The notes under the pieces were generated by a model. The model was not told where the DNA came from. It searched no databases and worked only from the letters and a program-made list of their open reading frames with translations. 64,000 nucleotides of DNA. Source: Penicillus capitatus (lineage: Eukaryota > Plantae > Chlorophyta). A program made the position numbers and the translations under genes. The stretch spans positions 929,197 through 993,196 of the forward strand of contig OZ287694.1 in the NCBI GenBank assembly GCA_965649825.1, given 5' to 3'. Below, in pieces: positions 1 through 59,854 of this stretch. How positions within the stretch are numbered: position 1 is the stretch's first letter; every line of letters begins with the position of its first letter.

Positions 1-3000
1 GGATGACCGATCGCAGCACAGATCTGGGAGGATCGGTGTGTTGATCGAAGAGGCAGTCGACAGAGAGCGTCACTCCTGCAGTGGCAGCTCCGCTTACGAA
101 GTCTGCAGACACAGCAACCAGTCAGCAGCCGGATCTCGGATGTACACAACAAGCATACCTGCCCCGAATAGCAAGGAACGCATCCACGACGTCCAGTTCA
201 CGTTGATGATTGCAGCTGCAGCGATCACTTGGAGGAAGTTGATGCTGATCTACAACACAGAACAGGTCGAAGAAGAGAAGGCACGAAGGACGTTCATTGT
301 GCCTTGAAGATCTCGACGACAGTCCGCTTTGCAATAGTAGCTGGTGGGTCTGTCTTTGCAATAGTTGGGTCTGTAGTGGATGCACTCATCGTGGATCCGG
401 TTGCAAGCGGTTCTGGACGAACATCTTCAGGCTGCACCTCTGTGGTGTTCACCGTCTCCATTATCTCGAAGTTACCTGGAGTGTCAATTGACGGTCTTTT
501 CTTTGGAGGGACAAGGCGACGATTTCTTCGACTGATTCGAATCCTTGAATTCTGATTTTTCACCGGCTGAGTGTTCAGGTTGCTTCTGATTGCGAAACTG
601 GAGAGGATCAGCAACACACAAAGAGAGGCCACAAGAAGCAATACGGTTCCAGAATCGTGAAGGCACTTGCCACAATCAAACGACCAAGAACGTCCGTATC
701 CAGCATCGCATGAGCCACAGAGGAGACCTGTGTAGCCCTGAGGCAGAGAAAGCTCAGCAATTGGAATATCACTGTCGAAGCTCACTTCTTTGCATTGAGC
801 CTGAGAGTAGTCTCTGTCTAACGACGCGTCCAGTTCGCAGGTCTCCATTTCGCGCGTCGCGTCATCCAAATCCTCTTCACGGCCGCTGAAGTCACATGCC
901 TCTCGCGATACACATTGCTGAACATGTCGAGAGCAGGGCGTTCGATGCCAGTAGCCTGCATTAGGATGGATGACTTCGGTGGTGCAGTTTGCGTTCTCTG
1001 GACACGGTTGACACGTCGTTGCATCTGGATCGAAGTTGCACTGCGATCCGCTGCAAGGAACACAGAGCGTCCCGTTCTCCTGGGAAAACTCTCCCAGCTT
1101 GCAATCTCGAACTTGGACCTCGACAGTCAGCGATTCCAGTCCAGACTCGCTGAAGTTTATTTGGATCTCGTACCGGCCTGGACGCTGGAATCCTGTGATG
1201 GGCGGGAAGCCCTTCCGCATCTCGTTTACTGGCATGTTGATCTCTCCAGAGAACAAATCGTTCGGAGAATGCATGGTTGCCTGGACGAATGTGTCGCCTT
1301 CGCCGAGCGCAGGACTCTGTCCATACCCATCCAGGACCTCGACGAGAAGCGTTGGTAGGGAATCTCCGCTTCTGTGATTCTTGGAAACGAGTTCGTTGTT
1401 CTTTACCGGCTTCTCGGTCTTTGCTGCATCGTTGTTGCGTATGAATCCCCTGGCGGATCTGGCAGACGAGGCGATGTTTGGGCCGTATAGACCAGCCTCG
1501 TTTGTGGACCACTCCGGACAGATATCCTCGGCCGATTCCAGTGCGTCCAATTCTTTTAAAACATCTGTCGCATCGATCGCTGGAGGGACTTCTGTGTCTT
1601 TGGGAGAGCAAGAGTAACGAAGGACTGTTGGATCTTTCAGGAAAATGGCACCCCCTGACGTCTTTGCCTTATTCTTCGAAAACCTGCTGCCTGTTACCGC
1701 TACAAAGGTGCAGGGATCATGTGAATTCGTGCAACTCTGTCGACGACGATGAGTGGCAATGTGCACTGCACCTATAACATGATGACTCTCAGGAATTGTT
1801 TGCTTCTGAATTATTCTCACACCTCCAATACTGGCATTGTTGTCGTTGAATGTGCAGTTGTTTAGCTGCAGCGCAGGAGAGCGGGGCTCGGAGGAATCAA
1901 AGGCGATTGCTCCCCCCTTTTTTCCAGCCCGGTTTTTGTCGAAGGTGCATTTAGCACATAGTAAAATGGAAGAGACATTTGCAAAAATGGCCCCACCTGC
2001 CTTCTTCGCCACGCAATTAGAAATCTCGAGCACATTAGCACTGAGAGTCGACCCAGAAAGCCAAATGCTTCCGCCATTTTTCGTTTTGGTGTTTAGAAGC
2101 GATGTTTCCAGGATAATTAACGAGTTGTTCTGATTCGCGGCAATGGACCCGCCAGCCAGATTGGCCCTATCATATTCGAGAACAGACTTCGTTAGTTGCA
2201 GGCTTGAATTCTTCATAATGATGGATCCTCCAACCGTAGCCTTGTTTCTTCGAAAAGTACTCTCATTAACACACGCTTCTGACTCCTCAAGGAAAACAGC
2301 GCCTCCCTCTTTTGTCGCTGTGTTGTTCTCCAGAACAGAATCATGGAAGTGCACTCGAGTCTTCTGATCAATGTAAAGGCAACCTCCAATGTCAGCTCTG
2401 TTGTCTCGGAAAGAAGAATTTGTCGCATTGATGGTACTCGATACTGCTCCGAACAAGCATCCACCCTTTTGTATTGCTTCATTGTTTACGACAAATCCGC
2501 TCAGGATAATCATGTCCCCTTCATGGAGACGAACGGCGCCACCTACAGTTTCCGCACGATTGGATGACATCGTTGAATTTTCAAGAACAACTCTGCTCTT
2601 TCTGTAAACACCGATTCCTCCACCCTTTGTGGCACTGTTGGATTCGATGACGCTATTTGATAACTGCATCATTGTGAAGTCTGAAACATAAAGACCCCCG
2701 CTGTCCGGAGCAGAGTTGAATTGCAAGACAGAATCGGACAGATTGAACAATGTTTCGGCTGTGCAACTGATTCCTCCTCCGAATGCATCTGCATGGTTAC
2801 TGTGAATGGTCAGATTTGCGGCAGTCACGTTGCAGGTTGAAAAATCCATGCCTCCTCCCGAAACGGTGGCATTGTTCGATAGAAAGAGAGAATCCAAAAT
2901 TGCGGTTTCACTTCGAAAACAAGCAAGGCCAGCTCCATGGCCTAAGTGAGCTCTGTTCTCCCTGAATACCATGTTATCGATAACGATGACAGCTAATGTG

Positions 3001-5383
3001 ATAGTCATCCCGCCACCATAACCGGCATCATTTCGCGTTGTGGAACAGTTCTTCAGGTTGACAGTTGACTCCAGTACTGATATGCCTCCGCCGGAAAACT
3101 GTGCCGTGTTTCCAGTGAAGTGATCCTCGCTTATATTTGCCTTTCCATCTACAAGGTTCAAACCAGCACCGTATTCAGCCACATTCCTTAAGTAGTTGCA
3201 TCGGTGAGACGCGACACTGGAATTCTCTGCCATTACTGCTCCTCCTGTCCCTTGAGCGGTGTTTCCTGACCAGATGATATTTTCCAGATGTGCACTGCTT
3301 TCCTCCACGATATGGGCTCCAGCGCCATCAAGAGAAGCATTGTTACCCGAGAAAACGCATCGGCTTATTGCCAGACGTTCCGAGAATATGCAGTCGAGTC
3401 CTCCACCAGTCTTGGCGGAGTTATTGTTCACATTGCAGTTACGAAGTTCCATCTGGGGAGATGCTGAAAGGAAAATACCTCCTCCCTTGTCGAGCACAGA
3501 GTTTTCTGCGAAAGTTGTATCCACGATCTTGCTGTCCAGAACGCCATCGCAGTAAAGAGCACCTCCATTCCCTGCGCTATTCTTGGATAGAATGGATTTG
3601 CGGACAATGAGATCTCTGGATGTGAATACATATAGACAGCCACCATCTCTAGCTGTGTTGTTGTGGCATTGTACGACAGACAGCTTTGTCGAGTTGCTCG
3701 CTGTAAGAAAGATGGCTCCTCCTTTCCCTGAGGCAGTGTTGTTGTAGAAGACAGAGGAGAACAGCTTCAGCGTTCCGTTGAAGACCAGGAGGGATCCTGC
3801 ATCAACTACAGCGATGTTGTCTTGAAAATGACAACGGTCGATTGTCAGATTGCCATTAAAAGCGGCGACGGCGGCACCGGTTTCCGCAGAATTGAAAGTG
3901 AAGTTGCAGCCAGACACCGCGATAGTATTGGTGGAATTCGATAAAATCGCAGCTCCAAGGAGGCGATCGAAGTTCTTATGAAATGTGCTGTTAATGACAA
4001 TGACAGCTCGGGCTCGGTCCAGCAAGAGAGCGGATTGATTGGAGGTTCTGATGTCGGTATCCCTCATCTCCAGGCTGCCTTCGACGATATGGATGACAGA
4101 CAGTTCGTTCGAATGCGCTCTCAGACGATCGACTGAGGACGAAGATCCTGACGGGGACGACATAAGGGATGATGATGGCCTTCCTTCGGAGACGCGTCTG
4201 TTCCTCCTCAGCGTCAATCCTCTCAGATCGTTCTCCAGAGAGAGTCTGGCAAAGCACCGATCACGGCAGGTGTTGTCTGAGAAGGCGACGTCGATCATCT
4301 CCAAGGACGAGCAAGACGAACTGGAGAAGGAGAGACCACTGGCTCCGTCAAGCGAGTTTCGTCTGAACGCCACGTGATGGAGCCTGATCAATCCCGGAGA
4401 GCTGTCCGGCAAGCAGTCGCCGACCTCGACGATGGAGGCATCATCTCCGTCCAACGAGCAGCCCCGAAAGACGAGATTGGCCAGGAGTACACTTTGAGAC
4501 CTGCAGAAGACTAACGGTCAGTCACATCGCCAATCACGCATTTGCTTTTACCTGATGTGAAAGATCCCATCCTTCGGCGGACATCTGAGTCGGACCTTTC
4601 TCTCTGCCTCCGGGAATGTACCATCAGCGAGCTCGGTTGATGTGACGTAGGAACTCAGAGTGAGATTCCAAGGCACTGTGACTCTGGCAGGCACTCGTAT
4701 GTCGTCCTCGACGTCCAGAAGAACGACATCGTTCTCTCTTGTGCAGTTGACGATGGTACCAAGATCATCGGATACGCCTTCCAGTGCCGCCGAGTCCACC
4801 AACCATGTCCTCGTCTCTTCGTCCAACAGCTCTGCTATCTCTTGTCGTGTCAGCTGACACGCCACATCTGTCCACGCCAGACACAGTTGGACTATGGTTT
4901 CAGAACAGCTTCTCCCTTACCTTCGGTATCAGGGCCGCGGGATCTTCTCTGCGCCAAACCACGAGTAGGAGGGTGAGCCTAAGAACAGTCATGCTTAACA
5001 GATATGATGAGAGATAAGAAATGGTTCAGGTTTTACAACATACCTTAGCTATCTGAGAGAGTCCGGCCTCCTGTCGGTTCCACTCAGGAAAACGTTCAAT
5101 ACGATTTTCTAGAAAACGCGTAAATAATTAATGTCCATTTAACCGATGAGTGAAAACGCGATACACCAAACACAAAGGAACAAGGATCAAAACCTCGTCA
5201 AGCTGCCTGTAGTATTCTGACGCGACATTTAGTTGACTCACCTGGTGGAGTATGAGGCTGTGCGGAAGCGACACGCATCTCTTCTTCTTCGGCCAGGGCA
5301 ATGACTTGCGCGAATATGAGGAGAACGAAGCACAGAAATTTTGCTGCAGTACGTCCATGTGTTCTTCTTGCCGCAGAGCACAT
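1..5383 (-). CDS. Giant secreted/membrane protein A: signal peptide, Pmp-like right-handed beta-helix repeats, Cys-rich (GCC2/GCC3-like) region, multi-pass TM C-terminus; multi-exon, 3' end runs off the window
   Basis: ATG 5383 gives MCSAARR...KFLCFVLLIFAQVIALA (signal peptide). Exons join via ORFs 4548-4865 and 294-4454. Many GGA(I/L/V) and FxxN motifs and a CVPCSGSQCNFDPDATTCQPCPENANC Cys-rich block. Exons at 249-~155 (ISINFLQVIAAAAIINVNWTSW) and ~102-1 (DFVSGAATAGVTLSVDCLFD) match the paralog at 15.8-17 kb. Confidence 0.85.
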
Positions 5384-15806: not shown

Positions 15807-18800
15807 TTAAACCTGACTGGATGACCCCGGCTGTGTTTGAGGGTTCGGCGCATTACGGTCACGTTTTCCAGCAAGCTTAGCACAAAAACGTGCAACAATT
15901 CTGCTGGAATAGATTCTCAGTACTCGATACATTCCCCAATCAATGGCGGCATCCACTCCATCACACACCAGCACTGCCCTTGCATAGATCTCGATCGATC
16001 GAAAGATCTTGAACATCAGAAGACAAAACAATCCTGATATGGCGAGTGACAAAGAAACGGTGAGCAGCACACGTACGGCATCAGAAAGGCGGCTGTCATT
16101 GAAAAGAACACCAGATGCAAAGGTAAGTTGCGATATGATCAACGATGCTGTTTCATAGGCATTCAAGAAATCGAAGTCCTCTTTGAAGGGTTGACAGGAA
16201 ACATGCATGTAGACTGAACTAGCAAGGACAAAGATGGCAAGAATACTTTGAATGTTTGTGCCTAATGGATAAGAAAAAACGACCACGATGGCCAGCAACG
16301 CTTTCCTAAGCATGACAGTGGATTCCCAGAAAATAAAACGTTCTTTGTAAGCGCGAAACAGAAAACCACATGCTTCAGTGATCCATTGATTATCGTTCGT
16401 TTCCGTGGGATGCAATTTCATTAAGGCATAGGCCAGAGCTGTTGGCAGTCCGAAGGAGACAACGATGACAACAGGCCACCCGACGACTGCCGCAAGAACA
16501 GCATGGGAACCCCTGAAGCATTTAAGAGATGTGTCTACTGCCCAGTAATGAGTAGTGTGATCGATGTCCGTATCGTATGAATCATGCACCTTGATGCAGT
16601 ACAATGTGTTGACTGCCATCTTTGTTACGGAAAGATAAGTGAGGTAAGCCACAGCCAAAGAACTGAGTAGTGCTCTCTTTCCGAAGTACCAGATGCTTTC
16701 GTTGAATTTACGCATTAAGATGATCCACAAAACACTGTAGAATGCTAATATACCCAAGGGGACAGTGATGAATATCGCCGATCGAATGACCGATCGGGGA
16801 GGATCGTAATCCACTCCGAATAGGCAATCGACCGAGAGGACGATACCTTGGGTGGCGGCTCCACCTAAGAAATCTGTCAACGGCACACCTCAGATGTCAA
16901 ATCAGCGCATCGATGACCTTACCTGCAACTAAAAGGAAAGATCTCATCCAGGCAGTCCAGTTGGTGTTGATCATCACAGCAGCTGCAATGACTTGGAGAA
17001 AATTGATCATGATCTACGAAACGATGATCGTCAAACGTCAGTATGCGTTCTGTTTTTAGAATCACTTTGAAAATTTCAACTACGTGTCTCCGCGCGAGAA
17101 TCGGATCGATCGAACTTTGTCGATTGGTTGGCGATGGCGATCGAAGATTGGGATCGATGACATCTGGCGGAACGCGGCCAGTGTGCAGCATCTCCACCAT
17201 CTCGAAGTTCACTGGTACTTCATCTGATTCTCCACCCCTTTGCCGCTTGGACGATTGCTGTGGTTTTAGGCTGATGCGGCTGATCAGGTTTTGATTGATC
17301 TGTCGGGTAGTCAGATTGCTTCTGATGGCAAAGCCGGAGAGAAACAAAAGCACGAGGAGGGACATCACAAAGAGCACGACCGTTTCCCACTTATCATGGC
17401 ACTTATCGCAATCAAAAGACCGCGATCGTCCATATCCTGTTTCACATGACCCGCAGAGAACTCCCGTGTATCCCTACACAAACACATCCTGTTGCCTTAT
17501 CACTATTGGTATGACACATACTTCCTTGCATTGGGCTTGAGAGTATTTTTCGTCGAGCTGCTCGTCAAATTGACAGTCGTGCAAGTCTTGAGTCACGTCC
17601 ATCAGATCTTCTTCCCGTCCATCGAAATCGCACCCTTCTCTCGACACACATCGTTGGATGTGTTTCGCGCAAGGCGTTTTATGCCAATAGCGCCGGATTG
17701 GATGGATAACATTCGTTGTGCAGTTTCCATTGTCCGGACAGGATCGGCAAACGGCAGCATCTGTGTCAAAATTGAACTGAGCGCCGCTGCACGGAACGCA
17801 GAGAGTGCCATTCTCTTGTGAAGATTCTCCCAACTTGCACTGTCGAACTTCGACGTCGACAACCATCGCTGGCAAATCGGAATCGCTAAAATCGATTCGG
17901 ATCTTGTATTGCCCGGGACGCTGAAACCCTGCGATGGGTGGGAAAGCTTTTCGTCTCTCGTTTACCGCCATAATCACTTCTCCAGCAAAAAAATTATCGG
18001 GAGAGTGCATCGATGCGTGAACATACGCCTCGTTTGATCCCAGAGGAGGTCCTTGTCTAAACCCGTCGACGACTTCCAACAGTAATGCTGGTAGTACGTC
18101 GCCGCTTCGGTGATTCTTGACAACAAATCGGTTGTTTTCTACGGGTTCTTCGTCGTCTGTTTTATCGCCGGCTATCATCAATCCGCGTGCGGAATGAGCA
18201 CAGGAGGCGATCATCGGACCATATCGACCGGCTTCGTTCCCGACCCACTCAGGACAGATGTCTTGGGCAGATTTTAATCGATGCGTCGCATCGATTGCAT
18301 CGATCGCGTTCTGAACTGGTGGAGTCTCGGTGTCTTCAGGAAAGCACGAGTAACGAAAGACACTGGGGTCTTTTGTAAAAATGCCACCTCCTGATGTCTT
18401 CGCTGTATTCCGCGAAAACCGACTGCCCATCACCGCAAAGAATGTGCAAGATGCATTTCGTCTTGAGCAACCCCGGGATGCTTCATCGGTGGAGACATAT
18501 ACTCCGCCTACAACACGCATTATCGAAAACTATGATCATATCGAATCGATATCGATTTACCTCCGAGATCGGCGCTGTTATTGGCAAAGGTGCAGTTGTT
18601 GAACTGCATGGCGAGAGACTGGGCTTTACCGGATTCAAAGGCGACCGATCCGCCTTGATTTCCTGCGGAGTTGTCCCTGAGAGAGCAATCCGAACAGAGA
18701 AAGACAGAAGATTCATTGGCCAAAATGCTACCACCGTCCACGGTCGCTCGACACATTTGCGATCGTAGCTCCGATGCCGTTAGATTTGATTCGGAAAGCC

Positions 18801-21800
18801 GGATGGCTCCTCCTGTGGAAGCAGAGCAGTTTAGAAAGGAGGTATCGACGATCGACAGAGTATCGTTCTCTATCGCAGCGATCGATCCACCCGACAGAGA
18901 CGCTCTATCGTTTTCGAAGACGGTTTCAAGTGCACGAAGCGTCGAATTCTTCATCAGGATCGATCCTCCTGAGGATCCGCTGTTCTCGCGAAAACGACAC
19001 TTCGTCACTGTGATGACAGAATCATCGGCCAGAATCGCGCCTCCGTCTTCGATGGCTGAGTTATTTCGAATGACGCTGTCTTGAAGACTGATGCTGGAAT
19101 TGGACACTGCGTACAGGGCGCCACCCTGTTTAGATCGACTGTCTATGATTGACGTATTGTACAGGTTCATTTTGCCCCCGCGTTCGACGGAAAGACTCCC
19201 TCCTCCGTCGATCGCTGTGTTGATCGAAAAGATAACACCTCTGGTGACCAATTCTCCCTCGGAGCAGCGCACGGCACCGCCAACTCTATCTGCACGGTTT
19301 GATGACAGCATTGAATCTTCGACAATGACTCGTCCCGTTCCGTAAACGACCAATCCCCCACCGTTTTTGGCTGTGTTGGATTCCAGTCGGCAGTCCGTCA
19401 AATGCACCACAGAGTTACGTACATAAAAGGCGCCGCCATTCTCGGCAGCATTGCGTTGCACTGTGGAGTTCGACATGTTGAACACAGATTGTTGATCCAC
19501 GACAATTCCTCCTGCCGCTTCATCGCATCTGTTCCCCACGATCGTCAGGTTTCGTGCGACAACCGAAGCTAGGCCAGCAATCTGAATGGCACCACTGGCA
19601 TAGACGGCCGCATTCGATACAAACTCCAGGTCTGTCAGCGTCGCATTGCTACGAAAACAAGCCAAACCGCCCCCGTACTGCCCTGCGCTGTTGTTACCGA
19701 ATCTGCTGCTGCGCGCATCAAGTATACCGTCATCGAAGAAGACACCACCTCCAATTCTAGCTTCATTCGTCGCGATGTAGGCGTCCTTCAGGACGAGTCG
19801 TGATTCACCGGTAGCCAGAATACCACCTCCGTTCTGTGTGACAGAATTGTTCAGAAATGTATTGGAGGGGATTCTGGCTGTTCCATGGTCGATCGCGACA
19901 CCACCTCCTAGGGCGGCATGGTTGGAAGTGTAGTTGCAGGATCTGGAAGTCATATTCGATGTTGATACGAAAATCCCACCTCCTGTTCCACCAGCAGCAT
20001 TCGCCGTCCAATTGACTGCTTGTATGACAACACTGCTGTTCTCAGTGATCTGTGCGCCAGCACCGTTGGATGTTGCTGCATTCGATAGAAAGAGACATCG
20101 CCGGATGCTCAAATCTCTTGATGCACGGCTCGTGAATCCCCCTCCGTACGACGTGGCCGTGTTCGATTCGATTCTTGAGTCGATGATGCGACTGTCAGGT
20201 GCTGTATCTAAGTAGAAAGCGCCGCTATTGATGGCTGTGTTGTTAACCAGTGCCGATCTGCGAAGGATAAGTCTTTCCGATTCAGAGACCCACAGACATC
20301 CGCCACTACCAGACGTATTGTTATGGCATCGAAGTGCAGTTAGCTTTGGTGAAGAGACGCTTCGAATGTGGATCGCTCCTCCAGCATTGGATGCACTGTT
20401 GTTTTCGAAAAGGGAAGCTTCCACCTCGAACGAGCCTCCCTCTGCGAAGATCGCGCCACCATTGCTCCTAACCAGATTGTTGTGAAAGGCACAATGGTCC
20501 ATCGCCAGGACGGTGTCTGCAGTAGCGATGGCTCCCCCGATTTCTGCCACATTCGACACAAAACTGCAATTTGAGATGCTCAGGTGTTCGGTAGAATTCG
20601 ACTGGATAGAAGCTCCAAAACGATGAGCGGAATTGTTGTGAAAATAGCTGTCAGAAATGGCGACTGTCAGAGCGCGATCGAGCACGATGGCAGGATGTCC
20701 ATCGTTTTCGCTAAACCTGCTATCCAGCAGATCCAAGTTTCCCTCCACGATTCGAAGAACAGAGAGTTCATTTGCGTTTGCAGTCAGGCCAACAACAGCA
20801 GAGGTGGATAAGGACGATGCCACAATGAGTGACGCCGGCATTGTACTCTCACCAGTCAACCGCGTGTTTCTTTCTGCCACCACAGCCTGCAGGGTGTTCT
20901 CAGACGACAGGACAGCGAAGCAGGCGTCTCCACAGGCGTTGTCGGAAAAAACGACGTCCACCATCTCAACTGACGAACAGGATGCATTTCCAACGGAAAC
21001 GGCGCTCGTTCCGTTCAATGCGTTCTGTCTGAAGTGCACATGGTGCATGCGGATGATTCCCTCGATGTCCTCCGAATCGCAAGGATCGACTTGAATGATG
21101 GATGCCGCTGTTCTGGTGCCCAGAGTGCACTCTTCGAATACGAGATTGGAGAGCAGTACGTTCCGGGCCCTGAAGAAACCGAGCGCATCGCGCGATCAGA
21201 AAACCAAACGACAGTGCGAATCTTGCTGACCTGATGCGGAAGGCGCTTCCGTTTCTGGGACAGCGGAATCGAACCTTCTGATCTGTCTCGGGAAAAATGC
21301 CGTCTCGATTGTCTGCTCTTTCGACAAAGGAGCTCAGCGTCAAGTTCCATGGAACGTATGCGGTCGATGCCAATCGAGTTTTTCTCTCTGTCTGAAACAA
21401 CACCACATCGTTCTCTCGAGTGCAGGGAAGAATGGCGTTGAGATCATTTGCCACATTCTCCAGGGCCACTTGGTCAACTAGCCACGTCCTCGAGCCATCG
21501 AACAGATCTGAGATCTCAGAGTCCGTGAGACGGCATTGCACATCTAAACAATAGAATCATTTGAAACTGGGACCTCAACAGTCTTTGCGCGACCTGGGTT
21601 GTCAGGGTCGTCCACGTCTGTCTGCTGAAGACGCCTCGACGTTGTACTTCCCTAGAGGGAACACGCGTTATTCGATTGCGTCGCAGAGGCGAGGTCACTT
21701 GTAAGGATTGCACACGGTCTTCTTGGATGCCGTCGGAAGTGGATGGATGTGATGAGACGGAGGCGGCGCCTAAATGCAATCGGAGTCTTAGGCAAAGGGA

Positions 21801-44049: not shown

Positions 44050-45624
44050 CTAAACCTGATAGTTACACAAAGGCGACACATTCGTGTCGTTCTTTGTCGC
44101 TGTCATGGACTTTGAGCAATTCACAAACTCAGTGCTGATCTCTTCTTCTAGTTCAAAATATGTCTCCAACACTGTCAACGTTTTATCATAGATGTCGTCG
44201 TTCGGATGTTCCTGAAGGAGCTCCAGCTTATCTAGCCCCCCACATTCCTCGATCTCCAGAGTAAACGCATTCATCTTACTGGGATTCCGTTCGGCAGCCG
44301 CCTTCAGAATATTCTCGATGCCTTCGAGTGCCACGAGGACGATGCGAGGATCTGGACCATCCAGCATGTCACATAGAGGACCAAGACAGCCGGCATGGAC
44401 GAGGTACTGAATCTGCTCCCAACTACCACCCGATGTCGTATTGCTGATCGCCCACGCTGCCTCTTTGCGCACTTCGAAATCCGCACTTCTCAAAATCATG
44501 ATCAGCGTCTCAAACAGTCCCTCCTTCAACACAGCCTTGATCTGATCCTGTGTGCCGGCAGTGATGTTGGAGATCGTCCAACACGCTTCTTTTTTGACAC
44601 TCTTTTTCGGATTCTGTCGCAGAAGGTGATGCAAACGTGGAAGAGCGCCGCAGTTCAACACCACTTGTGTCTGATCGTCTGCGCCTGTCACGATATTCCC
44701 AACCGTACGCAATGCCGGAACGATAATCCCGTTGTGTTCACTGCCGAGCAGTTCCACCACTCTTCGACAGATGCCGGACTGCAGCACCCATTCGATGCGA
44801 TCATTGGTACCGTCGGAGAGATAAGACAACGCCCAACAGGCATCTGTTAGGACTTCTTCATCCGTGTGGTAAACCAATCGAGCCAGTGCTGGCAGAATCT
44901 TTTTGACGAGTTCAAAGGGAGGAGCAGGTTTGCCTCTGCAGAAATTGGACATCGTCCACACACCGTTCCGGATCAACGACAGCGACTCTTTGTTTGACTG
45001 CATCACTTTTAGCAATGGCCCGACGACATCGTGCTGCAACACAAGGTCACGGTACTTGGGCGAATCGCCGGCGATGTTGCCCAATGCCCAGATGGCCTGT
45101 TCGCGAATATCCAGATTGAGATTTTCGGCACCGAGTTGCTGAGCGATGACAGGCACAGCGCCGTTTTCCACGATGAGACTTGCATGTTCTGAAGTACCAG
45201 ATGCTACATTGGTGACGGCCCACAGCGCCTCGAATTGAAGTTTTGGCAAATCGGATCTCTGACAGAAATCCACGAAACGCGGAACAATGCCTTGACGCAC
45301 AACGACATCGATGGGCGGATTGTTTTCGAGCGATAAGATTTTGCGAAACCGCTGCGTCGCTTCAAACTGTTTCCGACTGTTCTCGCTCCAAACGTCGCGC
45401 ACGAGTGCCTGGATGTTCTCCTCGACAAACGCGGGTTCGCTCACTTCGATTTCGCAAGCGTCCGTCGGGGCACACCCATGCAACACCCTTCGCTTCTGAA
45501 TTTTCTCGTCCCGCGTCAGTTTGCGCAGTTCGACGTTGCCCTGATGATGTTGTTCTCGTTTTCGGCGTCCATCGTCACAGCCCGTCCCTTTCTTTGCATC
45601 CTTCTTGCGACCATCTGTTGGCAT
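44050..45624 (-). CDS. IMPA: Importin subunit alpha (IBB + ARM repeats), intronless
   Basis: RRKREQHHQGNVELRKLTRDEKIQKRR (IBB), LQFEALWAVTNVASGTSEH, WALGNIAGDS, KEACWTISNITAG, GGLDKLELLQEHPN. Confidence 0.95.
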   Translation of the reverse strand: MPTDGRKKDAKKGTGCDDGRRKREQHHQGNVELRKLTRDEKIQKRRVLHGCAPTDACEIEVSEPAFVEENIQALVRDVWSENSRKQFEATQRFRKILSLENNPPIDVVVRQGIVPRFVDFCQRSDLPKLQFEALWAVTNVASGTSEHASLIVENGAVPVIAQQLGAENLNLDIREQAIWALGNIAGDSPKYRDLVLQHDVVGPLLKVMQSNKESLSLIRNGVWTMSNFCRGKPAPPFELVKKILPALARLVYHTDEEVLTDACWALSYLSDGTNDRIEWVLQSGICRRVVELLGSEHNGIIVPALRTVGNIVTGADDQTQVVLNCGALPRLHHLLRQNPKKSVKKEACWTISNITAGTQDQIKAVLKEGLFETLIMILRSADFEVRKEAAWAISNTTSGGSWEQIQYLVHAGCLGPLCDMLDGPDPRIVLVALEGIENILKAAAERNPSKMNAFTLEIEECGGLDKLELLQEHPNDDIYDKTLTVLETYFELEEEISTEFVNCSKSMTATKNDTNVSPLCNYQV

Positions 45625-45790
45625 GGTAATGACGATAGCGCAGCAGTGGTGTTGGATTGTGTTGGTACGTTCGCGCGTTTCATGACGTTGGTGGACGATA
45701 ATGACGATGCCGTCCGTCACCAGATCTCATTTCCTTTCGCCTTTTCCTCGTCTTCCAGATCTGCTCCGTGTACCTGTCGTCGATTTCAGG

Positions 45791-51492: not shown

Positions 51493-52854
51493 TCACATTT
51501 CGGAGAGGGTACGACGAAATGATGGACGTAGTCCAGTGGAACGACTGCTTTCCTTCATGGAGCTCGATGCTCGGAGATTTTTCGAGGATCTCTCGTAGTC
51601 AGAAGTGAAATCCTCTTGTTCTTTCACCAAAACAGCACGAGTGTGTAACACTTCAGCCAGCAAATCAAAGAATTCTGTCGGCTCAGATCCTTCATGGATC
51701 TCTTTCGCGTCCGGCGCACGTTCGTATTTGCTCAGCTGTTGAGCAAATTTACGAGCCCCGTCCAGGTAAGGATGCGCGTGCCTGGATCCGATCCAGATAA
51801 ACACTCTCTCAGGACCATGGATCACAAATGTTCCTCGGGGATCGAACACAATTGACGCTGGTGGTCTGGCACGAGCAGTCTGTGTACGCAATAACTGTCT
51901 TGGCACCTAATCCATTCTCACTCTTCTTCTCACTCTATTCTCAGACACACCGATGCTTACTATGTAGTTTGGCTGGTTGTAGGAGTGTGTGCCCAATCGA
52001 TAGATACGCAAAAAACCATCCGATGTGACACGAAAACGGCCACCCCAAGAAATCAACTACAATGGCATCCAATGAGCATTCGTACATGCCACGGTGTCGA
52101 CAGAGACATCATGCGTGATGTCTGTCTGTTCCTACCTGAGTGCAGAAATTGACGTTGGGGTCAACAACACCTCGACGTCCCTTCAGTTCTTCCTTTGTCT
52201 TCTCAAACGATTGTTCTTTTCTCCACATGACATAGGCAATAACCAGCGCAGCACTTCTGGAAACACCCTGTAAGCTGTCACATCAATTAACCGTCACCAC
52301 GATGTGTGATATCACACTTGTGAACAATGTACAAAAACATTTCCATTCTTCTTCTTTGCATCTTCAATGAAATCAAAGACATCGTAGAGCACAGCAAGGA
52401 TATCCTCCACTCCCGAGTCTTGCAGATAGAGTTCTTTGTAATACAGCTCCGGGTAGAAGTAGTTTTGCACTTCGAGGCGGACACAGTTGACGACGTGGGT
52501 GATGCCTTTCGCATCAAGTCGAGCCCTGTCCTGCGCCACACCTTCACCTCCAAAGTAGACGTGGTCCCAAGCCCACGAGCAATCCTGTGCAAAATAACGG
52601 AGCTTTTCTGCGCGTTGTCCCGTCTCCGTTATTCGACTTCCGTTATGATGCGCTGCCTCCGCCTGCAGCTCCCCATACTGTGTAGGGGATAGGTCGTCTG
52701 GCAGCTCCAGTAATCGCATCTGGCGTCGTTTTCCGTGGTGAGTCCCCGAAAAAAACTCAGCCGCGAAGTTCGGCAGAGCTTTTATGCGAAATCCCTTCGG
52801 CAACGCGGAACTCGTGCTTTGATTGTTTTGTTGACTCGTCCCAGGTAACAGCAT
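51493..52854 (-). CDS. MKP1: MAP kinase phosphatase 1-like dual-specificity phosphatase with gelsolin-like domain; 3' end approximate
   Basis: GITHVVNC, LYLQDSGVEDILAVLYDVFDFIEDA, VFVHCSQ|GVSRSAALVIAYVMW, FDPRGTFVIHGPERVFIWIG. Confidence 0.85.
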
Positions 52855-53056
52855 CTCAAGAATGAGTCGGACAACGGCAAATTCACTGTCTCTTCGCCCA
52901 ATAGATACCGAGCCGCGCGCGATCCAGACAACACCACCGAACGAACGCACCAATGATGTACGACGACGACGGCAACGGCAACGACGACAACGCGTAGTTC
53001 TCCCTCGACCAAAGGAACGAACACACTCGCATTGCACTTACACGCTATTCTTGCGC

Positions 53057-54250
53057 ATGGAAAGCGACGGCGATGAACACGGACCACTGCTCGTCCACGA
53101 TGACGAGAGTCTCGTCCTCGACCGCTCTTTCGTTCCAGTACCCCGAGACGGATTCCGCGACCCCGAGGATACAGAGACGCGTGTGAGCGAACGCTTTCAG
53201 CCGATGCGGACCATTGCGCTCGTTTCGTGCTATTCCGCTGCACTCGGTGTCTACATCGCTGTGCAAACTGTGTACATCACCGTATGGGGTGACGTCGATA
53301 CCGAGATGATACTGGCTGCTTCATTGCATGTGCCGTTGCTCATATTGGCGGGTGTCATGGAAGGGATCATTCGATTGGCACATCGACGGCGTCAATCACT
53401 GGGATATCTCGAATTCTATCGACAAACAAAGCGACTGCTGCCCATTCCATTCCAGACAGCTGCTTACTCTGTTGCCGCTCTGCTTCTGCTTCAGTCCCTT
53501 ACGAGGATTTCGGGATTCGTCTCGCAGAAAGAGTGCATCATTGCGATCTGCGTTCTGGAAGGATTGGCCATCAGTGTATTCGATTTCCTCTACATTCGAC
53601 GCGTGCTGCGTCACAATCGAAAAGAGACACTGCCAGATACGAGCAAATATCTTCAGTCTCCACTTACAGACATCCCCGATACGAGACGACGGAAACGCGA
53701 TGTCGTGTTCGATAATCAAGTCGAAGTCATCCGGTAACTCCAATGCTTCGAGGTATCGATCACGAGGCAGACAGATGCTGTCTGTGTACAGATATCTTCA
53801 GAAGCAGCGCAATAATTTACAGACAGAGGTTCTGAGACTGCGGGAGGCGGATCCATCGAGACGTGGGACGCCAGATGTCGTCGTGGCTTCCGATGACCAG
53901 CGATACCTCGTTGCTTCGGGAGAGCAGCGCATCCGGTCTGCCATTTCATCTGAGAGGTCTCACGCACGACAGTGCTGTGCTGTTGTATCTCTAGTGCACT
54001 GAAAGCAGAAGTGGAAACGCTCAAGCGGGAGTGCGAGACAGCAAAGGAACGATTCATTGATCGAACAGAAGATGCTCAGCGTTATCAAGCTCTGTTAGAA
54101 TTGCAGAGAAAAGAGAACCACCGATTGCGGATGACATTGGAGGAATGGTCTCGAACCAATGCCAAGCTCGAGTCGCGATTACAGAAGGCTTTGGATCGTG
54201 TGGCGGCGAAATCTGATGCACCATCAACAAGTCAAGGAGATATTTCGTAA
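53057..54250 (+). CDS. TMEM192/plant FIP1-like membrane protein with coiled-coil tail
   Basis: Four hydrophobic segments, GYLEFYRQTKRLLPIPF..AY, HN...PD...SPL, then coiled coil (YLQKQRNNLQTEVLRL; LRMTLEEWSRTNAKLESRL). Confidence 0.7.
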
Positions 54251-54271: not shown

Positions 54272-56664
54272 TTAGTATGTGTCTTCGAAATCGGCAAAGA
54301 CATAGTAGGTCTTCACATCTGTTGCATTCATGCCATTGAAATTTGAGGCTCCAGCCAATGTGTATGCCCCCATGTCAGGAAACAGCAGCCAGTCACCCGA
54401 ATACATGTCTGGCAGCATACAGTCTTTGAGAACAGTGTCCAGTCCATCGCACGTTGGACCAAAGACCGTGCTTGGATAGCAGGAGTGATGTTGCATGGCA
54501 CGGTTGATTGTGAGAGGAATGGTTTTTGGCGAACTGTGATCGTAGAGAATGCAATTGAAGGAGCCATAGAGTCCATCGGTGATCCAGTAATCTCGCAGCG
54601 GTATTCCCGATTCTGCAAAGCGCTCCCTTCGTCCGAAAATGTAGCAGGCCAGTGTCGCACAGGTCTCGGCAAAGTAGCGACCCGGTTCAGCGATGATGCG
54701 TACGCCTTCGTCGACGGGAAAATGATGATCGAGGGCTTGATTGACGACATCTTGCATCGCATGGAACTGCTGCATGTTGTCTTTCATCTTTCCAGAACAG
54801 AATCCGCCTCCGATGTCGAGGATCGAGAGATCGAAGTCGTACTGGGCACCGATATCAAACGCACGCTTCGCTAGAGCAATGGCAGCCGAAAAGGCATCCG
54901 GATTCGTTGCCCCACTTCCCACATGAAAACTCACTCCGACGACGTCGATGCCCAACATTCTCGCTTTTTGATAAAGGGTTGGCAGATCGTACATCTCGGC
55001 ACCATACTTATTGCCCAGCAAACATCTCGCCTCTGGATCATCTGCTCGGATTCTTAACAGGGCCCGTGGATGGTGCGCATTGGCTTTCAGTTTTTCCAGT
55101 TCCGAGAGCGTATCGAATGTCGTCATCTTGACACCGTATTTTTGAGCAGCACAGATATCTTGTGGATGTTTGCATGCGTTGGCAAAGAGGATCTTGGACG
55201 GAGGAATCCCCAGATCCAATACCAGTTTGATTTCGTCCTTAGAGGCGCAATCAAATCCAGCACCCAGCGATCCCAGAAACCGAATCAGAACGGGATCTGG
55301 ATTGCATTTGACAGCATAGTATGGTTCGATACGGGGAAAGAGTCGCCTCCAAGTGAGATAGAGTTCCTGCACCGTTGTCAGATTCATGATGTAGAACGTG
55401 CTGCAAAGATTATTGGAAACGATCAGATCTCTCATGTAGCTCAGCATCTCAACACTTCCCAGATTCTCAATGCCATATCTCTTTTCAAAATGCGGCATTA
55501 TTAGAGAATCGAACTTGACATCGTCGTCCAGGATGGCAGCAGGCGCATCCTCCTCCAGCGGAAATCCTTCAAAGGTCGAGTCGACATCCGACTGACCAGA
55601 AAGACAGGACGAAGGAATCATCGTATTGGGAGACTCGATTCTTTGCACGGTACTCGCCTTGAACACGACGTGACTACCGTCCGCTAGATATTGGACTGAG
55701 AGCCCATCTGAGCAGTATCCCCTCAGGGAATGCTGCAAGTCTTTGAGTAGGAGGATGTCTTTGTATGAGGAGGAATGCAAAGAGATGTGGATATCCTGTG
55801 GAGCAAAGATGCGCAGGACTTGAGCGAGTGCCATGTTTAGACAGATGTCGTTGGGTTTGAGACAGGAGAACTCCACACTGGCATAACTGCATTGCTCCTC
55901 CGGTGTCACGTGAATGGTCAAGATTCCGCTCTTGGACAAACTGTTCAGGGAATAACCACAGGGTTCGAACATGCAATCGTCGAGCAAGGCTCCGGGCAGC
56001 AATTCTGCAATGCCACTTTCGTAGGTCGTCGTTCTGGCATCGACGAATTTTTCCGTCCGGACGAACTGCTGAGCCAATCCTGGATCGAGTCCCGTGAGGC
56101 ACATCTCCACCGAGGAGGCAACAGGAGAGAATAATCCTTCCTTTTCTGTCGCATAGAAAAGATGCCACTGTAGACCACGAGACTGATTTCCCAATACATA
56201 AGAGGCGCCATTCAGATGTGCAAAGTGCTTGTTCAATTCCTGGACTTCTTCTTCGAAGTTTTGATGAGGATAATGCTGCAAAGAACAAGTGATGTGACAG
56301 CTGAAAAGGTACTGACGATACACACCTGAGCATCGGGAAAGAGAAAACTGGCACGGCTGTATTTCACTCGTCGGACGTACATTCCCAAATCGACGGTCCA
56401 CTCGAGTAATCGTCCCAGTCCATTCAAGATTTGTGTGCGGCCGCATGTCTTGAGGATAAATGTACTGTGGCGAACGAACAAACTGCTTTCGGAGAGTACA
56501 TAGGCATCAACATCTGATGTGTGACGTGCTGAGATGATGTTACAGCGCGTCAGGTGCATCAGCTGATCCAATTGATCTCGTGATATCTGTCGCAAACCGA
56601 TCGACGACGTGCGGCAAAAACCAAACTCGATCTCAATACGTTTCTCAGATCCTTCGAAAGACAT
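54272..56664 (-). CDS. SAMDC/ODC: Bifunctional S-adenosylmethionine decarboxylase - ornithine decarboxylase fusion (~780 aa)
   Basis: Exons 56664-56326 and 56275-54272 (50-nt intron). AdoMetDC motifs: FEGSEKRIEI, YVLSESSLFV, LKTCG, FEPCGYSLN, TIHVTPE. ODC motifs in the same frame: YAVKCN, HVGSG, DIGGGF, EPGRYF, FGPTCDG, MGAYT. Confidence 0.95.
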
Positions 56665-56697
56665 GGCGACTGCTTTGTAAGAAAAAACAGTAAACGA

Positions 56698-56946
56698 TTA
56701 GTGCAGAGACAGAGACACAAGGTGGCGGCGGCTGGATCGTGGCCTGTCAGGAGGGTCTCTTGGCACACTAAACATAGAAATGCATTTGCCGTCATCAAAG
56801 GAGACAGTTTTGCGAACATCGGAGCAGCAGGGGCTAAACTTAGGGATACCACCCCACGGGCGAATTTCGCAGAAGTCCAGTGAGTCTTCCTTGCAAGCGT
56901 CGACCAACAAACAATGACTACTTGAGTCGTTTTCACCAGAGTCCAT
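56698..56946 (-). promoter_or_regulatory. Conserved-peptide uORF homologous to the land-plant AdoMetDC small uORF
   Basis: MDSGENDSSSHCLL...CEIRPWGGIPKF versus the plant consensus MESKGGKKKSSSSSSL...EDVRPNGGIKKF. Ends 33 nt before the main ATG. Confidence 0.75.
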
Positions 56947-57039
56947 GAGCGAGAGAACGAAGAGAGGCGACTTCCGCCAGCGTTGAATGCAGAAATGCGA
57001 TGAAATGGATCTTTGACGGCGAAGAAGAACGAGATGATT

Positions 57040-57407: not shown

Positions 57408-59854
57408 TCAGGATATGGGACTTGTGCTCTCCTTGAGCCATGCCTGTGCTTCGGGGGAGAGCCTGTTCGACACCGTCTCCCAGATTCGTTGGTGATATTC
57501 GTTGATCCACGTTTTCTCCTGTACGGATAGATCTTCTATCCTCATGAGTTTCTTTTGAATCGGAACGAGAGAGATCGTCTCGAATCCTAAAAACGACATG
57601 CCCTCAAACTTGAGCGGCGTTTCTTTCTCCTTGATAATGCAGAGATTCTCAATCCGAATGCCGAAATTCCCCTTTTCATAGTAACCAGGTTCATTGCTGA
57701 CCACCATGTTCGCTTTCAGTGGCTCCTGTGCCATCAGAGCCGAAGCTCTGAAAGTGATCGCAATGGGACCTGCATCCACACCGTCTCGGTGCAACAAGGC
57801 GAGAGAGGGGCACTGCACCTTCATGAACACACATATGTGCTCCGACTCCGTGTCCCGTCCCATGCATGTACTCCAATCCCATAGCCCAAAGGGGACGACG
57901 CGCAAAAGCGTCAATGGCAATACCTGCCGTGTCTTTTGGAAAGACAGCTGTCGCCATCGCAACATGTCCTTGGAGAACGCGTGTGAAGCACGTCTTCTGA
58001 TGATCGGACGGTGTGCCCAGATGAAAGGTCCTCGTAAGATCTGTTGTCCCACAGTCATACTGCCCGCCCGAATCGATCAAGACCATCGAATTCCCATCCA
58101 CCGTGCTACAGGAGTCTGGCATTGCATGATAGTGAATAATAGCTCCGTTCGCATTCGCCCCTTAAGTCAGAACACACTGTTTATGGAAGGACCCTTCTGG
58201 AGGCGAGAATCTGTCAGACCAGCAATAGTCGGGAAGCTCACTCCCTTGAAGCCTTTCTGCTTTGCGCGTCGCGCGGTGATCTCTATATCCACATCCACCT
58301 CTGTCAACGTGCGCCCCGAAGCAATCTCCTCGTCCAACCAACTCAAGAACTCGATGACGGCAGTGGCATCACGGATGTGCGCCTCGCGCATACCATTCAG
58401 CTCTAGTGGATTCTTGATAGACATAAATGATGTCAGAGGCGTCTTGTCGCGCACAATCAGTTTGTCGCTCTGTCGCCAATATCTGTTGACATCAGGATTA
58501 GGCGCATGACAGCATACCTCTTCCCCTAGAGCCTCCCTTGCCGCCACGAATATGGCTTCGTTAACAAGTTTAGCATCGAGCCACACTTTTGATGTGTTGT
58601 TTTCACTCAGACGTCGTTTCAATCCCTCGGTGGCCTCTTCGTATGGCTTCACAGTGATGTTTACCGCTTTCAGGTAGGCCTCAACCTCTTCTGTGATTTT
58701 GGCAGGGTCTACGTAGAGATCCGCCGAATCGGGTGTGATCATGAGATAGGAAATGAAAACGGGCGAACTGTCCTCGTCTGCCCCTCTCAGATTCAGCGTC
58801 CAGGCAATTTCGTCCAGTTTCGACACCAGGAGCGTAGATGCCTCGAAATCTGACATCGCTTTTCGAATCCTCTTCAATTTGGAATCGATACTCTCCCCTG
58901 CAAACAGCACAGTATACGGCCTGGCTTCTTATCTACTGAACAGAACTTACCGGCAATCTCCATGGGGTGAATGACGATAGGCTTCGAAGGGATTTCCGGG
59001 ATATCCTCTCCCCAGACGCGGTCAACCAAATTCTCATTTAACTGAACCACCTCCAGTTGCTGGAATAAAAAGTCTGTCGTGTTCGCGACTGCTGTGCAAA
59101 GGGTATGGGGACCTTCAGTTTCTTAGACAGTGTTTCAACTTCGTTGTTTGAGTGCAGGAATGGATCAATTCCAATACGGGAGCCTGCCTTCAGTGTCATC
59201 AACAGCCATTTGGAAATCTACACATACAGTCAGTCCACCCCATTTCGCCCGGGACAGGAGACAACAGAGGGACATACGTCGGGACATTCTGGTAGACCCA
59301 TCTTCATTAGTATCCAATCTGCAGACAGTTGTTGCTCTGCTTGCAAGAAATAACGACCGTCTGTCCACAAAGCGGCAGCCTCTGCTGTGATTACTGCTGT
59401 CCCTACGGCAGACGGATGCATCATGATGCGGTGTTCTGCGTGAATCGTCTGACCAGCACTGCCGGTGAATCCGGAGATGAAGGCACGTCTTTCGAAACGG
59501 ACAGGTAAAAACTCCATGAGATGCGGATCCGCCGATGGAACGATGTAAGCCGAAACACCGGCCCCCTTCATGATCGATCGCAGTTCCTCGAGTTTTTTGG
59601 CTGCTATGGTTTCTTCTTGTCCCATCTCTGCTGTCTCTGTGCTCGCCGAGTACACGGTAAACGCTCGAGAACGTGACTGCGGATGCAGTGCCTAAGCGCA
59701 GTACCGTCATCCTCGGCAAAACCGAGCTAGAGAGTACGACAAAAGAACGCCTTTGCGTGCGAAGAGAACAAACGTGTTGTCTTTTCAGCAAATGTGCCGT
59801 AGAGAATGCGATGCGCGTGCAAGGACTGGGTCTCAGCGTGCTGAGAAACGACAT
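57408..59854 (-). CDS. Xaa-Pro aminopeptidase P (M24B), organellar presequence, multi-exon
   Basis: AYIVPSADPH..EF...RRAFISGFTGSAG, AALWTDGRYFLQA, LDEIAWTLNLRG, LIDSGGQYDCGTTDLTRT, HGTGHGVG...HEG, SNEPGYYEKGNFGIRIEN. Confidence 0.93.

What the first reader, a model, noticed from the sequence alone, without database searches (positions are those of the whole stretch)
54272..56664. Single-polypeptide AdoMetDC-ODC fusion: both rate-limiting polyamine decarboxylases in one algal protein
A complete eukaryotic AdoMetDC (pyruvoyl site LSE/SSLF, TCG, HVTPE) runs without a stop through an acidic linker of about 50 aa into a complete PLP-dependent ODC (AVKCN lysine, HVGS, GGGF, EPGR, GPTCDG). The only intron lies inside AdoMetDC, not at the junction, so this is not a gene-model merge. 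A fusion in this domain order is established for Plasmodium, where it carries large inserts. This one is compact and plant-like, suggesting an independent origin. I cannot check whether it has been recorded for this lineage. It would couple putrescine and dcSAM supply stoichiometrically.
Basis: partly seen in the sequence, partly recalled or inferred. Interest (0 to 1): 0.85.

Follow-up and report, generated by a model that had tools for sequence, protein, structure and literature searches.

The report
Fused AdoMetDC-ODC polyamine gene with uORF
A green alga encodes both key polyamine decarboxylases as one 780-residue protein behind a conserved regulatory mini-gene; the gene is real and looks active, but the same fusion is common across green algae, liverworts and ferns, so it is a new member of a known kind.

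Summary
On the minus strand, 56664..54272 encodes a 780-aa protein. One 50-nt intron (56325..56276) interrupts the coding sequence. The N-terminal half is a complete eukaryotic AdoMetDC (Pfam 3.7e-87) and the C-terminal half a complete PLP-dependent ODC (1.1e-71). Every catalytic residue I checked is kept in both halves. AlphaFold2 gives two confident domains joined by a 39-aa acidic disordered linker (328-366).

A sister-species ortholog has no indel anywhere in the CDS and mostly third-position changes, including in the linker. This is therefore not a gene-model merge.

It is the best-conserved piece of the locus, and its intron position is shared with Bryopsis and Marchantia.

The novelty claim fails. 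The top 120 database relatives all carry the same three domains. They include many chlorophytes, streptophyte algae, liverworts and ferns. The same domain order also occurs in Cyanophora, Chromera and an apicomplexan.

Stand-alone potato AdoMetDC nests inside the fused streptophyte halves (195/200 bootstraps), so the fusion is ancestral in green plants. Whether it shares an origin with the Plasmodium-type fusion is unresolved.

The parts
56947..57010 (-). Conserved start of the 5' leader, upstream of the uORF. It contains no ATG, so there is no 'tiny uORF'.
   Evidence: 92.2% identical to the sister-species locus L001, against 72.2% further upstream. Sequence read.
56818..56946 (-). uORF exon 1, encoding MDSGENDSSSHCLLVDACKEDSLDFCEIRPWGGIPKFSPCCSD.
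   Evidence: 96.9% identical to L001, with 3 of the 4 changes synonymous. The motif FCEIRPWGG(I/F)xKFSPCC is kept in L002, a species with 62% protein identity.
56768..56817 (-). Intron inside the uORF (50 nt, GT..AG).
   Evidence: Only 70.6% identical to L001 and carries a 1-nt indel. An intron sits at the same codon position in L002, Bryopsis L004 and Marchantia L005.
56747..56767 (-). uORF exon 2, encoding CAKRPS plus the TGA stop. The spliced uORF is 49 aa.
   Evidence: 100% identical to L001. The spliced peptide hits Pfam PF08132 AdoMetDC_leader (E 0.0018, 18.5 bits, profile 11-51 of 51). The unspliced ORF gives no hit.
56665..56746 (-). 82-nt spacer between the uORF stop and the main ATG. 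It contains no ATG.
   Evidence: 84.1% identical to L001.
56326..56664 (-). CDS exon 1 (codons 1-113). It holds the proenzyme cleavage site E59|S60 (56490..56485) and C74.
   Evidence: 93.5% identical to L001.
56276..56325 (-). CDS intron (50 nt, GT..AG, phase 0), lying inside the AdoMetDC domain.
   Evidence: 84% identical to L001. It contains the only indel of the gene, 1 nt long, and the GT and AG are kept. In L002 the equivalent intron is read through by the gene caller, seen as an extra segment in P0002.
55634..56275 (-). First part of exon 2: the rest of the AdoMetDC domain (residues 114-327), with S222, H235 and E239.
   Evidence: Pfam SAM_decarbox covers 2-318. AlphaFold2 shows a folded domain up to residue 327.
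55517..55633 (-). Acidic disordered linker (residues 328-366).
   Evidence: The only segment with pLDDT below 50. Acidic composition. In frame, with no indel against L001; across the wider window 331-400, 13 of 23 substitutions are at third positions.
54275..55516 (-). ODC domain (residues 367-780). The PLP lysine K436 is at 55309..55307. Also holds H564, GGG 602-604, E643, R646, D692, C722 and D723.
   Evidence: Pfam hits. Alignment to human ODC. Residue mapping. AlphaFold2 fold.
54272..54274 (-). TAA stop codon. It falls 7 residues after the position aligned to human ODC residue 409, so there is no C-terminal degradation tail.

Best explanation
This is a nuclear gene of a green alga. Its closest named relatives are Bryopsidales such as Caulerpa. 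It encodes a bifunctional polyamine-synthesis enzyme.

Inferred mechanism:
- The 87-kDa proenzyme cuts itself between E59 and S60. This yields a 6.8-kDa beta chain and an 80.5-kDa chain whose new N-terminus is the pyruvoyl cofactor of AdoMetDC.
- That long chain continues through a 39-aa flexible acidic linker into a PLP-dependent ornithine decarboxylase. The ODC part, like other ODCs, must pair head-to-tail to form its active sites.
- One mRNA and one protein therefore supply both putrescine and decarboxylated AdoMet for spermidine synthesis.
- Translation is gated by a conserved 49-aa upstream ORF of the plant AdoMetDC-leader type. In plants this peptide stalls ribosomes when polyamines are high. 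Here the gate would throttle both enzymes at once.

Inferred, not shown: self-processing, both enzyme activities, dimer formation, and the polyamine response of the uORF.

Evolution: the fusion is ancestral in the green lineage. The stand-alone AdoMetDC of seed plants descends from it by loss of the ODC part.
For: - Gene model and motifs.
- Pfam domains at E 3.7e-87 and 1.1e-71.
- PDB sequence matches.
- AdoMetDC residues kept (human numbering first): E8/E11 -> E4/E7, E67|S68 -> E59|S60, C82 -> C74, S229 -> S222, H243 -> H235, E247 -> E239. They are conserved in 99-120 of 120 relatives (the shortfalls are mostly alignment gaps in truncated models).
- ODC residues kept: K69, D88, E94, R154, K169, H197, S200, G235-237, E274, R277, D332, C360, D361, G387, Y389, F397 and N398 all map to identical residues.
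- Ortholog L001 is 90% identical in DNA. It has zero indels in 2343 coding nt. Substitutions by codon position are 17/10/75 (AdoMetDC), 6/4/13 (linker) and 20/10/70 (ODC). The only indel is in the intron.
- Synteny is kept in three species.
- AlphaFold2 mean pLDDT is 89.1, with only 328-366 disordered.
- uORF evidence.
- The fusion is present in all 120 top hits and as complete transcripts in six algal genera.
- Potato stand-alone AdoMetDC nests within fused streptophyte halves in 195 of 200 bootstraps.
- Taxonomy: importin-alpha best named hits are chlorophytes. The ODC half groups with Caulerpa at 95% bootstrap.
Against: - There are no expression, protein or activity data for this organism.
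- The uORF's Pfam score (18.5 bits) is below the curated cut-off of 25.
- The residue aligned to the human putrescine-site residue D174 is Ala. Potato has Val there. Putrescine activation of the human kind is therefore unlikely, and 'stoichiometric coupling' is only an idea.
- The relative orientation of the domains is not predicted with confidence (pTM 0.64).
- I cannot see the rest of the genome, so separate ODC or AdoMetDC genes may also exist.
Confidence: 0.85

Rival explanations
1. Gene-model artefact: two adjacent genes, AdoMetDC and ODC, are separately expressed in vivo, with transcript termination, an internal start or out-of-frame splicing in the linker.
For: There are no transcript data for this organism. 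The linker is poorly conserved in length among relatives: the inter-domain stretch ranges from 61 to 277 residues.
Against: The ORF is continuous with no stop. The linker has no indel against L001, and across the wider window 331-400 most changes are at third positions. Relatives have single complete transcripts spanning both halves. Marchantia has one uninterrupted exon. All 64 two-domain proteins in my set keep the same order.
Confidence: 0.03
2. One half is a regulatory pseudoenzyme, like the trypanosomatid AdoMetDC prozyme or the ODC-like antizyme inhibitor, so only one activity is present.
For: Such dead paralogues are known in polyamine pathways (established knowledge). Antizyme inhibitor chains do appear among the PDB matches.
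Against: Every catalytic and cofactor residue I checked is intact in both halves. They are nearly invariant across 120 relatives. Both halves show similar purifying selection.
Confidence: 0.05
3. The C-terminal half decarboxylates a different substrate, arginine or lysine, as in the chlorella-virus ODC homologue that is an arginine decarboxylase.
For: The chlorella-virus arginine decarboxylase A207R is a strong PDB match (E 1.7e-81). Review PMC6356823 notes that an Asp-to-Glu change switches specificity.
Against: The residue aligned to human D332 is Asp (D692), as in ornithine-specific enzymes. The best matches are bona fide ODCs.
Confidence: 0.07

Closest known systems
Bifunctional AdoMetDC/ODC of Plasmodium falciparum (Muller et al. 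2000, J Biol Chem; cited from my own knowledge, not re-read here)
   Same: The N-terminal AdoMetDC and C-terminal ODC sit in one polypeptide in the same order. The same architecture was confirmed here for the apicomplexan Cardiosporidium and for Chromera.
   Different: The protein here is compact at 780 aa. The Chromera and Cardiosporidium proteins are 1041-1070 aa, and Plasmodium is about 1400 aa (from memory). It has no large inserts and only a 39-aa linker. It carries a plant-type leader uORF. Shared ancestry was not resolved.
Fused AdoMetDC-ODC proteins of other Viridiplantae (Caulerpa, Bryopsis, Tetraselmis, Micractinium, Chlorokybus, Marchantia, Ceratopteris and others)
   Same: Same three Pfam domains, same order and collinear over 99% of the query, at 40-56% identity. 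The uORF with the same intron position is present in Bryopsis and Marchantia. This gene is an ortholog of these.
   Different: It is among the shortest family members: its inter-domain stretch is 106 residues against a median of 133.5. It has no 'tiny uORF', which Marchantia does have.
Stand-alone plant AdoMetDC (SAMDC; potato structure 1MHM) with its leader uORFs (Pfam PF08132; Ivanov et al. 2010, PMC2811004)
   Same: The AdoMetDC half aligns over 61-330 (E 6e-46). Potato nests among the fused streptophyte halves. The leader peptide shows the RPxGG(I/V)xKF motif and the ...(K/R)PS stop context.
   Different: Seed-plant SAMDC has no ODC part. Here the ODC is attached, so the uORF would control both enzymes.
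Mammalian ODC (human, PDB 9b8m/1d7k)
   Same: Aligns over 379 residues at E 1.9e-103, with all active-site residues identical.
   Different: No C-terminal PEST degradation tail: the protein ends 7 residues after human position 409. It is fused to AdoMetDC at the N-terminus.

Membership tests
[quoted passage not shown] | Full-length match to the family profile above the curated cut-off | tested here: met
   293.1 bits against a cut-off of 22.2; profile positions 3-339 of 343.
[quoted passage not shown] | Glu-Ser self-cleavage site giving the pyruvoyl group, plus catalytic Cys82, Ser229, His243, Glu8 and Glu11 (human numbering) | tested here: met
   E59|S60, C74, S222, H235, E4 and E7 are all present and conserved across 120 relatives.
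[quoted passage not shown] | Actual autoprocessing and AdoMet decarboxylation | not testable with these tools
   Needs recombinant protein.
Eukaryotic ornithine decarboxylase (alanine-racemase-fold PLP decarboxylase; PF02784 + PF00278) | Both domains matched above the curated cut-offs | tested here: met
   241.5 bits and 65.4 bits against cut-offs of 23.4 and 23.
Eukaryotic ornithine decarboxylase (alanine-racemase-fold PLP decarboxylase; PF02784 + PF00278) | PLP lysine (K69), the Cys360/Asp361 pair, the Gly-rich phosphate loop, Glu274/Arg277, and Asp332 for ornithine specificity | tested here: met
   K436, C722/D723, G602-604, E643/R646 and D692.
Eukaryotic ornithine decarboxylase (alanine-racemase-fold PLP decarboxylase; PF02784 + PF00278) | Head-to-tail homodimer with shared active sites | not tested
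   Only a monomer was modelled. Interface residues K169, G387, F397 and N398 are kept.
Bifunctional AdoMetDC-ODC fusion protein | Both domains in one reading frame, with AdoMetDC N-terminal | tested here: met
   The same order holds in all 64 two-domain proteins examined.
Bifunctional AdoMetDC-ODC fusion protein | Expressed as a single mRNA and polypeptide | tested here: inconclusive
   No data for this organism. Complete fused transcripts exist in six related genera, and the linker is evolutionarily constrained.
Bifunctional AdoMetDC-ODC fusion protein | Common descent with the apicomplexan (Plasmodium-type) fusion | tested here: inconclusive
   In the ODC-half neighbour-joining tree, deep nodes have 0-17% bootstrap. 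The best BLAST partners of the Chromera, Cardiosporidium and Cyanophora ODC halves are a mix of fused and stand-alone proteins.
AdoMetDC leader peptide uORF, PF08132 | Match to the family profile | tested here: inconclusive
   E 0.0018 and 18.5 bits, below the cut-off of 25, but aligned to profile 11-51 of 51 including the C-terminus.
AdoMetDC leader peptide uORF, PF08132 | Located in the 5' leader of an AdoMetDC gene, with peptide-level conservation and a C-terminal Pro-Ser-stop | tested here: met
   The uORF stop lies 82 nt upstream of the main ATG. uORF exons are 97-100% identical to L001 against 70.6% for its intron. The ending CAKRPS* is identical in three species, RQKRPS* in Bryopsis and CVRKPS* in Marchantia, all with the intron at the same codon.
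AdoMetDC leader peptide uORF, PF08132 | Polyamine-dependent translational repression of the main ORF | not testable with these tools
   Needs reporter assays.

The most novel reading that the evidence does not exclude
The AdoMetDC-ODC fusion arose once and very early, in or before the common ancestor of green plants and glaucophytes. The bifunctional enzyme of chromerids and apicomplexans, Plasmodium included, descends from that same fusion, either vertically or by gene transfer from an alga. Stand-alone SAMDC and ODC in seed plants and some green algae are then secondary fissions. In the green lineage the ancient AdoMetDC uORF has controlled both rate-limiting decarboxylases from the start. 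The green-lineage part is well supported here. The link to apicomplexans is open.
Probability: 0.3. Interest if true: 0.65.

Novelty: new member of a known kind. Interest (0 to 1): 0.38.

Why it matters
For this locus alone the result is modest: it gives a clean, compact and well-supported example of a fusion that is common but little discussed.

Two points have wider value.

First, the fusion is not a Plasmodium oddity. It is the ancestral state of the plant SAMDC gene, and it is still present in liverworts and ferns. It also occurs in a glaucophyte and in chromerids. This reframes how plant polyamine synthesis evolved, and it makes the origin of the malaria parasite's bifunctional enzyme a testable phylogenetic question.

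Second, the polyamine-sensing uORF sits in front of both enzymes. A single translational switch could therefore set the supply of both substrates of spermidine synthase. The short, insert-free protein would be a convenient model for studying how the two domains talk to each other.

Tried and rejected
- Pfam scan of the unspliced 82-aa upstream ORF and of the overlapping 125-aa ORF gave nothing relevant. Only the spliced 49-aa version matches the AdoMetDC leader family.
- The literature yielded little. None states outright that green algae or plants have this fusion.
- The only trace is Table 2 of PMC6356823, which lists Micromonas pusilla XP_003057072.1 under both ODC and SAMDC.
- I recall that the abstract of Green et al. 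2011 (Mol Microbiol 81:1109) mentions this fusion in Micromonas. The paper is not held, so this remains unverified memory.
- I tried to test a single versus multiple origin of the fusion with a neighbour-joining tree of 164 ODC domains. The fused proteins are not one supported clade and deep nodes have 0-17% bootstrap, so there is no conclusion.
- BLAST ranking of the Chromera, Cardiosporidium and Cyanophora ODC halves was equally uninformative.
- No Plasmodium-length protein appeared among the best 150 representatives, so Plasmodium itself was not in my trees.
- A 1170-aa frog protein that looked like a distant fusion is two ODC domains in tandem, probably a merged gene model.
- I did not run a structure-library search. 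The sequence matches to solved structures were already decisive.
Full report
**What is there**

The finding's coordinates run exactly from the stop to the start of a minus-strand gene.
- Exon 1 is 56664..56326.
- A 50-nt GT..AG intron occupies 56325..56276.
- Exon 2 is 56275..54272.

Pfam finds a full-length SAM_decarbox domain over residues 2-318 (E 3.7e-87). It also finds both ODC domains: Orn_Arg_deC_N over 414-649 (E 1.1e-71) and Orn_DAP_Arg_deC over 576-749. The C-terminal half matches human ODC at E 1.9e-103. The N-terminal half matches human and potato AdoMetDC at about 1e-46 to 1e-48.

**Are both halves likely to be active?**

I mapped residues through the printed alignments.

The AdoMetDC half keeps the following, with human numbering in brackets:
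- the cleavage pair E59|S60 (E67|S68)
- C74 (C82)
- S222 (S229)
- H235 (H243)
- E239 (E247)
- E4/E7 (E8/E11)
- F3/F216 (F7/F223)

These positions are nearly invariant in 120 relatives. The residue aligned to human D174, part of the putrescine site, is Ala. Potato has Val there, so the enzyme looks plant-like and probably not putrescine-activated. This last point is an inference.

The ODC half keeps all 21 residues that I checked. They include:
- the PLP lysine, K436
- C722/D723
- the GGG loop at 602-604
- E643/R646
- D692, the equivalent of the ornithine-specificity residue D332

The protein ends 7 residues after human position 409, so it lacks the mammalian degradation tail.

AlphaFold2 was run with the 120-sequence alignment and gives a mean pLDDT of 89.1. 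It shows two folded domains (1-327 and 367-780) and a single disordered stretch, 328-366. That stretch is acidic. The predicted cleavage products are 6.8 and 80.5 kDa.

**Is it one gene?**

A metagenome contig from a sister species (L001) is 90% identical across the locus and has the same neighbours.
- Its coding sequence has no indel in 2343 nt.
- The only indel in the gene is 1 nt, inside the proposed intron. The GT and AG of that intron are kept.
- Substitutions by codon position are 17/10/75 in AdoMetDC, 6/4/13 in the linker and 20/10/70 in ODC.

The linker is therefore translated and under constraint.

A third species (L002, 62% protein identity) has the same gene and the same neighbours. 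Complete fused transcripts exist in Tetraselmis, Pyramimonas, Crustomastix, Mantoniella, Acetabularia and Neomeris. The Marchantia gene is a single uninterrupted exon. A gene-model merge can be set aside.

The most conserved DNA at the locus lies upstream of the start codon. It encodes an upstream ORF split by its own 50-nt intron:
- exon 1: 56946..56818
- intron: 56817..56768
- exon 2: 56767..56747

The spliced product is 49 aa: MDSGENDSSSHCLLVDACKEDSLDFCEIRPWGGIPKFSPCCSDCAKRPS.

Identity to L001 differs sharply by segment:

| Segment | Identity to L001 |
|---|---|
| uORF exon 1 | 96.9% |
| uORF exon 2 | 100% |
| uORF intron | 70.6% |
| DNA further upstream | 72.2% |

The third species keeps ...FCEIRPWGGFTKFSPCCCD, then an intron, then CAKRPS-stop.

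The spliced peptide matches Pfam PF08132, the AdoMetDC leader peptide (E 0.0018, 18.5 bits). That is below the curated cut-off of 25, but the match is end-to-end. The unspliced ORF matches nothing.

Bryopsis and Marchantia have the same uORF with an intron at the same codon. Their peptides end RQKRPS-stop and CVRKPS-stop. Marchantia also shows the overlapping 'tiny uORF' of land plants, which is absent here. This fits Ivanov et al. 2010 (PMC2811004).

In plants this peptide represses translation of AdoMetDC when polyamines are high (PMC2811004). Here it would act on both enzymes together. That is an inference.

**Whose genome is it?**

The window's importin-alpha has its best named matches in chlorophytes (55-56%) and then land plants.

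For the fusion protein, the closest named relatives are:
- Caulerpa lentillifera (53%)
- Bryopsis (47%)
- Ostreobium (46%)

The ODC half groups with Caulerpa at 95% bootstrap. The organism is a green alga near Bryopsidales with no named close relative in the databases. 'Algal' is therefore right.

**How common is the fusion?**

All 120 best hits among 5.8 billion proteins carry the same three domains. Named sources include:
- Bryopsis
- Nannochloris
- Micractinium
- Trebouxia
- Elliptochloris
- Coccomyxa
- Tetraselmis
- Cymbomonas
- Nephroselmis
- Auxenochlorella
- Chlorokybus
- Mesostigma
- Mesotaenium
- Marchantia
- Riccia
- Calypogeia
- Ceratopteris
- Adiantum

In a library clustered at 50% identity, roughly 45-50 fused clusters head the list before stand-alone ODCs begin. 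All 64 two-domain proteins that I examined have AdoMetDC first.

Beyond the green lineage, the same architecture is present in three more organisms:
- the glaucophyte Cyanophora paradoxa (756 aa)
- Chromera velia (1041 aa)
- the apicomplexan Cardiosporidium cionae (1070 aa)

**Evolution**

I built a neighbour-joining tree of AdoMetDC halves that also includes stand-alone potato and human AdoMetDC. Their sequences were taken from the alignments printed.

Potato falls inside the fused streptophyte group (Marchantia, Riccia, Mesotaenium and the two ferns) in 195 of 200 bootstraps. The stand-alone seed-plant enzyme therefore descends from a fused ancestor. The shared uORF and intron position say the same.

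The ODC-half tree has no support at depth (0-17%). It cannot tell whether the green, glaucophyte and chromerid/apicomplexan fusions share one origin. The phyletic spread makes an ancient single origin a serious alternative.

**Is it already known?**

The bifunctional enzyme of Plasmodium is textbook knowledge (from my own knowledge). For green algae:
- A 2018 review table lists one Micromonas pusilla accession under both ODC and SAMDC without comment (PMC6356823).
- I recall that Green et al. 2011 mention the Micromonas fusion in their abstract. I could not open that paper.
- Many fused proteins are already in NCBI and UniProt under names such as 'ornithine decarboxylase' or 'S-adenosylmethionine decarboxylase'.
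- I found no open-access paper that characterises the green-lineage enzyme, describes its spread to liverworts, ferns, glaucophytes and chromerids, or links it to the uORF. The library does not hold most subscription journals.

**Verdict**

The feature is real, well supported and correctly read as a fusion. It is a new member of a known and widespread kind, not a lineage-specific novelty.

I score interest at 0.38. That credit is for the uORF-plus-fusion arrangement, the evidence that plant SAMDC arose by fission, and the open question of a shared origin with the apicomplexan enzyme.

Noticed in passing
window 294..4454 (-) and 18520..21048 (-): Two large ORFs (1386 and 842 aa) carry Chlamydia polymorphic-membrane-protein repeats (PF02415). 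The second also has a NosD-like beta-helix region.
   Followed up: no
window 44050..45720 (-): A nearly intronless importin-alpha gene (IBB domain plus Arm repeats). I used it to place the organism in the green lineage.
   Followed up: partly
window 57408..58910 (-): An Xaa-Pro aminopeptidase-like gene (Creatinase_N_2, Peptidase_M24, Peptidase_M24_C) is split over at least two ORFs. It lies directly upstream of the fusion gene on the same strand and is syntenic in L001 and L002.
   Followed up: partly
window 52312..54250: A convergent plus-strand gene has a last ORF (coiled-coil-like, no Pfam hit) ending at 54250, only 21 nt from the fusion gene's stop, so the 3' ends probably overlap. Nearby are a TMEM192 homologue (52862..53737, +) and a dual-specificity phosphatase (52312..53037, -), whose ORFs overlap each other on opposite strands.
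   Followed up: no
window 56276..56325 and 56768..56817: Both introns of the fusion gene are exactly 50 nt. The orthologous introns are 49 and 51 nt in L001, and about 42-45 nt in L002 (the CDS-intron figure is read off the extra segment in P0002). This suggests a genome with uniformly tiny introns.
   Followed up: partly
P0260 (Gastrophryne carolinensis, KAM9319794.1): A 1170-aa frog protein ranks among the fusion's relatives but contains two ODC domains in tandem and no AdoMetDC. It is probably a merged gene model.
   Followed up: partly
PMC6356823, Table 2: The review lists SAMDC as 'absence' for Chlorella variabilis. Close relatives (Micractinium, Auxenochlorella) have the fused gene annotated as ODC or DCA1, so the 'absence' may be an annotation effect of the fusion.
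   Followed up: no
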